From contig NC_135766.1 of assembly GCF_052425735.1 (NCBI RefSeq), forward strand, positions 25,234,001 through 25,298,000: DNA of 64,000 bases, given 5' to 3'. The notes under the pieces are model-generated. The model was not told the origin of the DNA. It saw only the letters and a program-made list of their open reading frames with translations, and searched no databases. Shown one piece after another: positions 2,076-2,157 of this stretch (the first letter of the stretch is position 1; every line of letters starts with the position of its first letter). This stretch comes from Oculina patagonica (lineage: Eukaryota). The position numbers were made by a program, and so were the translations under genes.

Positions 2076-2084
2076 AAAAAAAAA
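2076..2084 (-). terminator. RNA polymerase III terminator (T9) of the tRNA-like gene
   Basis: Nine A on the + strand = T9 on the - strand, separated from the discriminator base by a single nucleotide. Confidence 0.7.
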
Positions 2085-2085
2085 T

Positions 2086-2157
2086 ATCCCCAGCGAGGAC
2101 TCGAACCTCGATTGCCTACCTCAGCGGCAGGAGTGATACCCGTTACACTACCGGGGC
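2086..2157 (-). tRNA. tRNA-like (Gln-CTG-like, non-canonical) Pol III gene inside the Maverick
   Basis: Minus strand GCCCCGG TA GTGT AACGGGTA TCAC T CCTGC CGCTGAG GTAGG CAAT CGAGG TTCGAGT CCTCG CTGGGGA T is a 72-nt cloverleaf with an A box, a consensus B box (GGTTCGAGTCC), anticodon CTG and discriminator T. Deviations are G33 and a G1:A72 mismatch. Confidence 0.75.

What the first reader, a model, noticed from the sequence alone, without database searches (positions are those of the whole stretch)
2076..2157. A Maverick/adintovirus-encoded tRNA mimic: complete Pol III cloverleaf gene with non-canonical G33 and G1:A72
Seen: a 72-nt minus-strand cloverleaf with all four stems, A and B boxes and the tertiary-contact residues (T8-A14, A15-T48, G18/G19, T54-T55-C56, A58). 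It has a CTG anticodon, a 4-nt variable loop and a T discriminator (Gln-like), followed by T9. It lies inside the element, between the PLA2 polyA signal and the terminal repeats. The near-universal U33 is G and pair 1:72 is mismatched, and its stem sequences differ from the standard animal tRNA-Gln as I recall it, yet pairing is retained. Known: adenoviruses, which are related to Polintons, make Pol III VA RNAs, and murine gammaherpesvirus 68 makes tRNA-like TMERs. I know of no described tRNA-like gene in Mavericks. Inference: a selected, probably non-decoding viral RNA (decoy against RNAi or innate sensors, tRF precursor) or a TFIIIC-bound boundary shielding the element's end from silencing.
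Basis: partly seen in the sequence, partly recalled or inferred. Interest (0 to 1): 0.88.

Follow-up and report, generated by a model that had tools for sequence, protein, structure and literature searches.

The report
tRNA-like gene in Maverick terminal repeats
A coral virus-like transposon (Maverick) carries a well-kept but apparently non-decoding tRNA-shaped gene inside the long inverted repeat at its ends, so a full sister copy has one at each end; tRNA genes had not been reported in animal Mavericks in the papers I could search, and what this one does is still unknown.

Summary
Window 2086-2157 (-) is a 72-nt cloverleaf (ARAGORN; Rfam tRNA 36 bits, threshold 29) with G33, a G1:A72 mismatch, a perfect B box and T9 directly after it.

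The window is Oculina patagonica (stony coral). Its first 2782 bases are the right end of a Maverick. Five independent insertions share the same last base and have unrelated flanks, so the gene is internal. It is neither a host flank nor a SINE.

New here: the gene sits in a ~1-kb terminal inverted repeat. A complete 20,951-bp sister element with a 6-bp target duplication has one copy at each end, both pointing inward. A second version (anticodon CTA, A33, C1:G72) lies next to a diverged PLA2 gene. It differs at 11 of 72 bases, against 43% at third codon positions, and its flanks do not align. All stem changes keep pairing. Position 33 is never U.

The gene is missing from other terminal-repeat types in the same genome and from relatives in three other assemblies.

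Best reading: a captured tRNA(Gln)-like Pol III unit, constrained but not decoding. It may act as a boundary or roadblock, or as a small RNA. Function is untested. tRNA genes are already known in polinton-like viruses and virophages, so novelty is moderate.

The parts
104..448 (+). Maverick late-region ORF (114 aa from GTG; called as 111 aa in sister contigs)
   Evidence: no convincing Pfam family
388..780 (+). Maverick ORF, 130 aa, coiled-coil-like
   Evidence: same 130-aa gene called in L031
749..1348 (+). Maverick ORF, 199 aa. Its 90% cluster holds 19 members; the 15 listed are this ORF's own Logan entry and 14 Oculina patagonica proteins
1320..1685 (+). PLA2-like virion protein gene (121 aa), the last Pol II gene at this end
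   Evidence: PF08398 E 6e-12; 1689 homologues, those looked up sit in Mavericks
1699..1704 (+). AATAAA polyadenylation signal after the PLA2 stop
   Evidence: direct reading
1775..2782 (.). Right terminal inverted repeat, about 1 kb. The inner border is taken from where the left end of a sister element (L033 14736-15531) starts to match
2086..2157 (-). tRNA(Gln, CUG)-like gene, 72 nt, with G33 and G1:A72; transcribed away from the terminus, towards the PLA2 3' end
2076..2084 (-). T9 run, Pol III terminator-like, one base after the discriminator. A T7-T9 run sits at the same place in the diverged version
2233..2720 (.). About three tandem units of 156 bp, each with a TGACGTCA and a CACGTG palindrome
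2721..2782 (.). Terminal segment: ATTGG at 2747, ending ...TACTACT at 2782, which is the element's last base. Host DNA starts at 2783
   Evidence: Five insertions end at this base with unrelated flanks; ATTGG position; blast ends at 2782/2783 in L022, L025, L026

Best explanation
The 72-mer is a tRNA(Gln)-type gene, presumably captured from the host. It has become a fixed part of the ~1-kb terminal inverted repeat of one Maverick lineage of the coral Oculina patagonica. The one sister element whose two ends were both fetched carries one copy at each end. Each copy is transcribed inward and faces the 3' end of the outermost Pol II gene: PolB on the left, PLA2 on the right.

Shown:
- It is internal and sits in the TIR.
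- It keeps the cloverleaf, the same A-box stretch, a perfect B box and a T-run terminator in two diverged versions.
- It changes far more slowly than neighbouring synonymous sites.
- Its anticodon loop is the least conserved part and never has U33.

Inferred:
- Host TFIIIC/TFIIIB/Pol III load on it.
- What selection keeps is the Pol III unit, not decoding.

My favoured mechanism (about 0.3) is that the occupied tDNA at each end acts as a boundary and roadblock. It would stop transcription that enters from host flanks, or from the promoter-like terminal repeats, from running antisense into the end genes. It would also delimit chromatin state.

Nearly as likely (about 0.2) is that the tRNA-shaped RNA is itself the effector. 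The stem-preserving changes lean that way.
For: Internal, not flank:
- L028 (the window itself), L025, L026, L022 and L027 all end at the same base and then have unrelated flanks.
- The L022 element is 20,951 bp with a 6-bp TSD (CATTTT).

In the TIR:
- L033, the left end of that element, matches window 1775-2782 in inverted orientation. It carries a 72/72 identical copy 425 nt from the terminus.

Constraint:
- The CTG and CTA versions differ at 11 of 72 bases.
- The adjacent PLA2 genes differ at 43% of third codon positions and at 15 of 26 fourfold sites. Binomial P is about 5e-7.
- The flanks on both sides do not align.
- Within the lineage there are 0/72 differences inside the gene, against 29/366 substitutions plus 32 gap columns outside it. 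Fisher P is 0.008.

Structure kept:
- 3:70 is C:G or U:G, 30:40 is G:U or A:U, 51:63 is A:U or G:U, and 1:72 is G:A or C:G.

Pol III unit kept:
- Identical A-box stretch, B box GGTTCGAnTCC, and a T7-T9 run right after the 3' end in both versions.
- Rfam tRNA scores are 36 and 40.8 bits.

Non-decoding:
- Position 33 is G or A.
- Three of the 7 anticodon-loop bases differ, including the anticodon.
- The discriminator differs.

General knowledge:
- tDNAs and TFIIIC sites act as chromatin boundaries (PMC3395662, PMC12409998, PMC6950938; I read only their titles and abstracts as listed).
Against: - There are only two sequence versions, so no true double-sided covariation is seen. Three wobble-compatible changes are weak statistics.
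- Sitting at both ends follows automatically from being in a TIR, so it is not independent support for a boundary role.
- The TIRs are modular and recombine (types A, B, C and L034). The PLA2 genes may therefore not date the tRNA modules, which would inflate the constraint test.
- The gene is dispensable. The L023/L030 element lacks it at both ends, the L034 end lacks it, and relatives in three other assemblies lack it.
- G33 and G1:A72 are also what a decaying pseudogene looks like.
- There are no expression, Pol III occupancy or chromatin data.
- The host's own tRNA-Gln genes could not be compared.
Confidence: 0.5

Rival explanations
1. Neutral passenger. A host tRNA pseudogene was caught in one TIR, copied to the other end by TIR homogenisation, and spread with a recently active lineage. 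It has no function of its own.
For: - It is restricted to some TIR variants of one genome.
- One complete element and other lineages lack it.
- G33 and G1:A72 are pseudogene-like defects.
- All five CTG copies are identical, as expected after a recent burst.
- TIR modules are shuffled by recombination, which could make the flanks look older than they are.
Against: - 15% divergence against 43-58% at neighbouring synonymous sites.
- 0/72 differences against 7.9% in the surrounding TIR.
- Every stem change keeps pairing.
- The T-run and both boxes are kept while the flanks do not align.
Confidence: 0.3
2. A working viral tRNA: a Gln decoder (CUG), or in the second version an amber suppressor (CUA). 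It would adjust translation of the element's genes, as proposed for tRNAs of polinton-like viruses and phages.
For: - It passes the Rfam tRNA threshold in both versions and has a complete cloverleaf with tertiary-contact residues.
- PMC12220804 reports 558 tRNA genes in its collection of 8300 PLV and virophage genomes and reads them as codon compensation.
Against: - Position 33 is a purine in both versions, whereas U33 is near-universal (general tRNA knowledge).
- The anticodon, position 38, pair 1:72 and the discriminator are not conserved.
- There are no in-frame stops in the 99 aligned codons of the PLA2 next to the CUA version, so nothing calls for suppression.
Confidence: 0.08
3. A host tRNA gene or tRNA-derived SINE head that merely lies next to, or was inserted into, this one copy.
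For: - A related Maverick in another assembly has a tRNA-His 35 nt outside its end (L012).
- The window holds other tRNA-like scraps.
Against: - The gene lies 625 nt inside a terminus shared by five insertions with unrelated flanks.
- It is present at both ends of an element bounded by a TSD.
- No SINE body or tail is present; T9 follows at once.
- In about 520 kb searched at once, all strong model hits lie inside Maverick TIRs; the L033 copy was found later.
Confidence: 0.02
4. A mascRNA-like processing signal. A Pol II transcript starting in the promoter-like terminal repeats runs inward and is cut by RNase P at the tRNA-like fold.
For: - TGACGTCA, CACGTG and ATTGG motifs lie upstream of the gene in its own direction.
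- The fold is in the sense orientation for such a transcript.
Against: - The T-run right after the fold is kept in both versions, which points to Pol III termination.
- Rfam mascRNA-menRNA scores 15.6 bits against a threshold of 42.5.
Confidence: 0.05

Closest known systems
tRNA genes of polinton-like viruses, virophages and MELD viruses (PMC12220804; PMC8502044, Fig. 6 legend)
   Same: A tRNA-type gene carried by an element of the Polinton/Maverick-related virus world. It was presumably taken from the host.
   Different: Those are reported as ordinary predicted tRNAs and read as codon compensation. The PLVs and virophages of PMC12220804 are largely from protists, and no TIR placement was mentioned in the passages I read. 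Here the host is an animal, the gene is part of the TIR, position 33 is a purine and the anticodon is not conserved.
Murine gammaherpesvirus 68 TMERs (tRNA-miRNA-encoded RNAs; PMC4337559, PMC8223928)
   Same: Virus-borne tRNA-like genes driven by an internal Pol III promoter, and not thought to decode.
   Different: TMERs carry pre-miRNA hairpins after the tRNA-like part. Here a T-run follows within two bases, so there is no room for hairpins. There is no sequence relation.
Adenovirus VA RNAs
   Same: Pol III type-2 (A/B box) small RNA genes in a virus family related to Polintons (my own knowledge).
   Different: VA RNAs are about 160 nt, are not cloverleaves and are not in the ITR. No Rfam family other than tRNA reached threshold here.
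tDNA/TFIIIC chromatin boundaries and ETC sites (PMC3395662, PMC12409998, PMC6950938)
   Same: An intact B box and tRNA gene placed at the edge of a domain. This is the mechanism I favour.
   Different: Those are host elements with measured occupancy and boundary activity. Nothing of the kind was measured here.
mascRNA / MEN-beta tRNA-like 3'-end elements (Rfam RF01684)
   Same: A tRNA-shaped, non-decoding fold.
   Different: It scores 15.6 bits against a threshold of 42.5. It also has its own Pol III terminator.

Membership tests
tRNA (Rfam RF00005) | Cloverleaf that reaches the family's gathering score | tested here: met
   36 bits (window) and 40.8 bits (L022 version), against 29. ARAGORN calls both.
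tRNA (Rfam RF00005) | U33 and a conserved anticodon loop, as in decoding tRNAs | tested here: not met
   G33 in the CTG version and A33 in the CTA version. Three of the 7 loop bases differ.
tRNA (Rfam RF00005) | Fully paired acceptor stem | tested here: inconclusive
   G1:A72 is mismatched in the window version and C1:G72 is paired in the other.
tRNA (Rfam RF00005) | CCA addition, aminoacylation, use in translation | not testable with these tools
   This needs tRNA sequencing and charging assays.
Type-2 Pol III gene | Internal B box GGTTCGAnTCC, plus an A-box region | tested here: met
   The B box is perfect in both versions. The A-box stretch is identical in both but fits my recalled consensus only in part (direct reading).
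Type-2 Pol III gene | Run of at least 4 T right after the gene | tested here: met
   T9 (window), T8 (L033), T7-T9 (L022, L027).
Type-2 Pol III gene | Transcription by Pol III | not testable with these tools
   No expression or occupancy data were available.
Maverick/Polinton | Protein-primed family-B DNA polymerase and rve integrase | tested here: met
   PF03175 and PF00665 appear in sister copies about 98% identical to the window's element (L022/L033) and in L030. Both genes lie outside the window.
Maverick/Polinton | Terminal inverted repeats and a 6-bp target-site duplication | tested here: met
   L033 against L022: inverted ends and TSD CATTTT, 20,951 bp. For the window's own copy only the right end was seen.
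tRNA-derived SINE | tRNA head followed by a body and tail, dispersed with its own target duplications | tested here: not met
   The terminator follows the gene at once. Every copy found is at the same place in a Maverick TIR. The whole genome was not scanned.
MHV68 TMER | tRNA-like part followed by pre-miRNA hairpins before the terminator | tested here: not met
   The T-run starts two bases after position 72.
mascRNA-menRNA (RF01684) | Reaches the family's gathering score | tested here: not met
   15.6 bits against 42.5.

The most novel reading that the evidence does not exclude
A virus-like transposon of an animal has built a Pol III/TFIIIC-bound tDNA into its terminal inverted repeats as a self-carried pair of boundary elements. 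These 'bookends' would insulate the integrated element from host read-through transcription and silencing. The decoding parts of the tRNA have been let go.
Probability: 0.25. Interest if true: 0.8.

Novelty: new variant of a known kind. Interest (0 to 1): 0.55.

Why it matters
Mavericks (polintoviruses) are very abundant in stony corals, yet the coral survey I checked does not mention tRNA at all (PMC11131425).

A constrained, non-decoding Pol III unit placed in the inverted repeats would be a new kind of accessory module for these elements. It would also be a natural test case for how integrated DNA viruses manage host transcription and chromatin at their edges.

The same genome holds sister copies with and without the gene at otherwise near-identical ends. 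Existing or easily made descriptive data (methylation from long reads, small-RNA and strand-specific RNA sequencing) could therefore compare the two states directly.

If it turns out to be only a passenger, it still documents how TIR modules are captured and swapped between Maverick lineages.

Tried and rejected
- Rfam at gathering threshold on the whole window listed nothing. The local search found the tRNA above threshold, so the first result was a filter miss.
- Exact-pattern scans for the anticodon arm and for the D-arm region found nothing in IMG/VR or JGI metagenomes.
- The search for related loci in IMG/VR with PLA2, with PolB and with a PolB alignment gave no confirmed relative.
- I tried to reach other element ends through spurious ORFs in the 3' region and the terminal repeats. 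This failed: no exact record and no homologue.
- JGI contig L031 (PLA2 97.5% identical) has the end type without the tRNA over the stretch it covers (matches window 1-1886, then 1967-2015), but it stops 377 nt after the PLA2 stop and does not reach the terminus.
- The host-flank and SINE explanations were considered and rejected.
- VA-RNA-like, TMER-like and mascRNA-like membership were rejected.
- The window's other ARAGORN call (tRNA-Arg, 33034-33111) and a tRNA-3'-half-like string near 21240-21300 got no Rfam support. They gave no host comparator.
- I could not compare with the host's true tRNA-Gln genes, because no tool scans the coral genome by DNA.
- I did not assess how intact the genes of the window's own element are upstream of the window.

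Full report
**1. The observation**

ARAGORN finds two tRNA-like genes in the window. One is tRNA-Gln(ctg) at 2085-2158 on the minus strand. A local Rfam search gives RF00005 (tRNA) at 2086-2157 (-): 36 bits against a gathering score of 29, E 7.7e-6 for 701 bases. The whole-window run at gathering threshold had listed nothing, which I take as a filter miss.

- G1:A72 is mismatched and pairs 2-7 are formed.
- The D stem has U13:U22.
- The anticodon stem has five pairs and the loop has G at position 33 and CUG as anticodon.
- The variable loop is four bases.
- The T arm is fully paired with a perfect B box.
- The discriminator is T, followed by one A and then T9 (2076-2084).

The ORF at 1320-1685 is a parvovirus-type PLA2 domain (PF08398). 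AATAAA follows at 1699-1704. A 156-bp tandem repeat fills 2233 to about 2720.

**2. Where the window comes from and what the element is**

- The PLA2 protein has 1689 homologues. Those looked up lie in elements with protein-primed PolB (PF03175) and rve integrase.
- The neighbouring 199-aa ORF clusters at 90% identity or more with many Oculina patagonica proteins.
- Locus L028 from assembly GCA_052425735.1, chromosome CM126643.1, is 100% identical to window 1-3000. The window is therefore from this stony coral, and it starts inside a Maverick. Only the element's last 2782 bases are in the window.

**3. Is the gene inside the element?**

Eight copies were fetched (L022-L029). They are about 98% alike up to window position 1886 and then show three kinds of right end:
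- Type A (L028 = the window, L025, L026, and Logan contig L002) has the tRNA-like gene and the 156-bp repeats.
- Type B (L022, L027) has 113-bp repeats, then a second, diverged PLA2 piece, then a tRNA-like gene with anticodon CTA (ARAGORN labels it 'Pyl' under the bacterial code), then terminal repeats.
- Type C (L023, L024, L029; Logan L004; JGI L031 over the stretch it covers) has 113-bp repeats only.

L028, L025, L026, L022 and L027 all end at the same base (...TACTACT, window 2782) and then continue into unrelated sequence. The gene is therefore 625 nt inside the right terminus. The host-flank reading is refuted.

**4. The gene is part of the terminal inverted repeat**

The left end of the L022 element was reached through its PolB gene (L033).
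- After the PolB stop, L033 14736-15531 matches window 1775-2782 in inverted orientation.
- It carries a copy identical at 72 of 72 bases, 425 nt from the terminus.
- The six bases outside the two termini are the same (CATTTT), and the element measures 20,951 bp.

So this is a bona fide Maverick with a roughly 1-kb TIR and a 6-bp target duplication, and it has one tRNA-like gene at each end. Both genes are transcribed inward, convergent with PolB on the left and PLA2 on the right. In this particular element the left copy is the CTG version and the right copy is the CTA version.

**5. Distribution**

A covariance model built from the two natural versions was run in four searches over the loci as they came in. 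The largest covered 519,223 bases.
- It scores above 100 bits only on these TIR copies.
- The next hit is an unrelated tRNA-His at 37 bits.
- The gene is absent from the TIRs of the L023/L030 element (113-bp type).
- It is absent from the PolB-side TIR of a third lineage, L034. That TIR shares the pieces matching window 1805-2019 and 2726-2782 but lacks the block in between.
- It is absent from relatives in three other assemblies: ERZ25067872, ERZ25067546 and ERZ25878340.

The gene is therefore a lineage-specific TIR module, not a general Maverick feature, and elements without it exist.

**6. Is it constrained?**

Between versions:
- 11 of 72 positions differ.
- The sequence on both sides does not align.
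- The adjacent PLA2 genes differ at 43% of third codon positions and at 15 of 26 fourfold sites, but only at 11-16% of first and second positions.
- At the third-position rate, eleven or fewer differences in 72 has a binomial probability of about 5e-7.

Within the lineage:
- The window's right TIR and L033's left TIR show 0/72 differences in the gene.
- Outside it they show 29/366 substitutions plus 32 gap columns (Fisher P 0.008).

Stem changes:
- The three one-sided stem changes keep pairing (3:70, 30:40, 51:63).
- Pair 1:72 goes from G:A to C:G.

Caveats:
- There are only two versions.
- No pair shows a standard-to-standard double change.
- TIR modules recombine, so the PLA2 clock may not apply to the tRNA module.

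**7. What is kept and what is not**

Kept in both versions:
- the A-box stretch (identical);
- the B box;
- all four stems;
- G18 and G19, T54-T55-C56 and A58;
- a T7-T9 run directly after the 3' end.

Not kept:
- position 33 (G or A, never U);
- anticodon base 36;
- position 38;
- pair 1:72;
- the discriminator.

The anticodon loop is the most variable part (3 of 7 bases, against 8 of 65 elsewhere). That is the reverse of what a decoding tRNA shows. I conclude, as inference, that the Pol III transcription unit and the fold are what is maintained, not decoding.

**8. Mechanism**

The inferred steps are these. TFIIIC binds the B and A boxes, TFIIIB and Pol III follow, and a short tRNA-shaped RNA ending at the T-run is made. 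This would happen at both ends of the integrated element.

I favour slightly (about 0.3) a DNA-level role. The occupied tDNA would be a boundary and roadblock against transcription entering from the flanks or from the terminal repeats. Those repeats carry TGACGTCA, CACGTG and ATTGG motifs, and such transcription would otherwise run antisense into PolB and PLA2. tDNA and TFIIIC boundaries are established in other eukaryotes (PMC3395662, PMC12409998, PMC6950938; I read only their listed titles and abstracts).

An RNA-level role is nearly as likely (about 0.2) and fits the preserved stems.

The other readings, with my estimates:
- a functionless passenger, about 0.3;
- a real decoder or suppressor, about 0.08;
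- a mascRNA-like processing signal, about 0.05.

Sitting at both ends is a by-product of TIR location and is not counted as evidence.

**9. Comparison with what is known**

- tRNA genes are known in polinton-like viruses and virophages: 558 in a collection of 8300 genomes (PMC12220804).
- They are flagged in some MELD viruses (PMC8502044).
- The survey of polintoviruses in stony corals does not mention tRNA (PMC11131425).
- TMER, VA RNA, mascRNA and SINE membership each fail a defining feature (see the membership table).

I file this as a new variant of a known kind: a virus- or element-borne tRNA-type gene that is new in its host group, its TIR placement and its non-decoding loop.

**10. Housekeeping**

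- No repaired, consensus or ancestral sequence of the element was built.
- The covariance model is a search profile made by the tool from two natural 72-mers. Consensus lines printed by the tools were not used.
- The N runs (11185-11485 and 11493-11691) were left alone.
- Gene integrity upstream of the window was not assessed.
- Within the window the four ORFs match the gene calls of sister contigs, with no break seen.
- The second PLA2 piece of L022 has no internal stop in its 99 aligned codons.

Noticed in passing
window 2816-8423 and 15663-21242: Large inverted duplication of host DNA (arms 87-98% alike). It carries paralogous small cysteine-rich, signal-peptide-like ORFs, for example 3702-3950, 4062-4517, 6032-6460 and 6651-7100, all on the minus strand. 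The Maverick end at 2782 lies about 30-50 bases from where arm homology starts.
   Followed up: partly
window 33034-33111 (-): ARAGORN calls a 78-nt tRNA-Arg(ccg). Rfam gives no tRNA hit even at E up to 1, and my model scores it at 20.7 bits. It is probably a tRNA-derived repeat or a false call.
   Followed up: partly
window about 21240-21300: The second arm of the duplication holds a string that reads like the reverse complement of a tRNA T arm plus acceptor 3' half (GGAATCGAACCC...). Rfam gives no hit.
   Followed up: partly
L012 13703-13776 (-): In a related Maverick family (assembly ERZ25067872), one of ten copies sits with its terminus 35 nt from a tRNA-His(gtg) gene that lies outside the element. 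The other copies have no tRNA nearby.
   Followed up: partly
L032 6783-6841 (+) and L021 6821-6876 (+): Two related Mavericks from other assemblies have a weak, anticodon-arm-less tRNA-like remnant at the same intergenic place, just after an AATAAA-like signal. It scores 23 bits in L032, where TTTTT follows, and 10.6 bits in L021. The 3' half is not conserved between the two, and Rfam gives no hit.
   Followed up: partly
L022 11643-13554, L027 likewise: Composite right end: 113-bp repeats of another TIR type cut short at the tip, then the tail of a diverged Maverick (second PLA2, the CTA tRNA-like gene, terminal repeats). The composite sits at two chromosomal sites with different flanks. TIR pieces look modular and are exchanged between lineages.
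   Followed up: partly
window 2741-2782; last 60 nt of L022, L024-L027, L029, L030, L034: All TIR types, with or without the tRNA-like gene, share a TGATTGG (CCAAT-box-like) motif about 30-40 nt from the terminus and the last bases TACTACT. This recalls host-factor sites in adenovirus ITRs (my own knowledge).
   Followed up: no
window 2233-2784: The 156-bp repeat period is a multiple of three, and an ORF (2374-2784, 136 aa) runs through the repeats. It has no homologue in the protein collection, so it is most likely not a gene.
   Followed up: yes
window 11185-11485 and 11493-11691: Two runs of N (500 bases in all). They were left as they are.
   Followed up: no
window 24118-24275 / 24836-24993 and 29533-29647 / 40790-40904: Further inverted-repeat pairs, 82% and 98% complementary. 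They may be small transposon ends.
   Followed up: no
whole window: The Rfam search at gathering threshold missed a tRNA hit that scores 7 bits above the threshold in a local search. 'No match' from the fast mode should not be taken as absence.
   Followed up: yes
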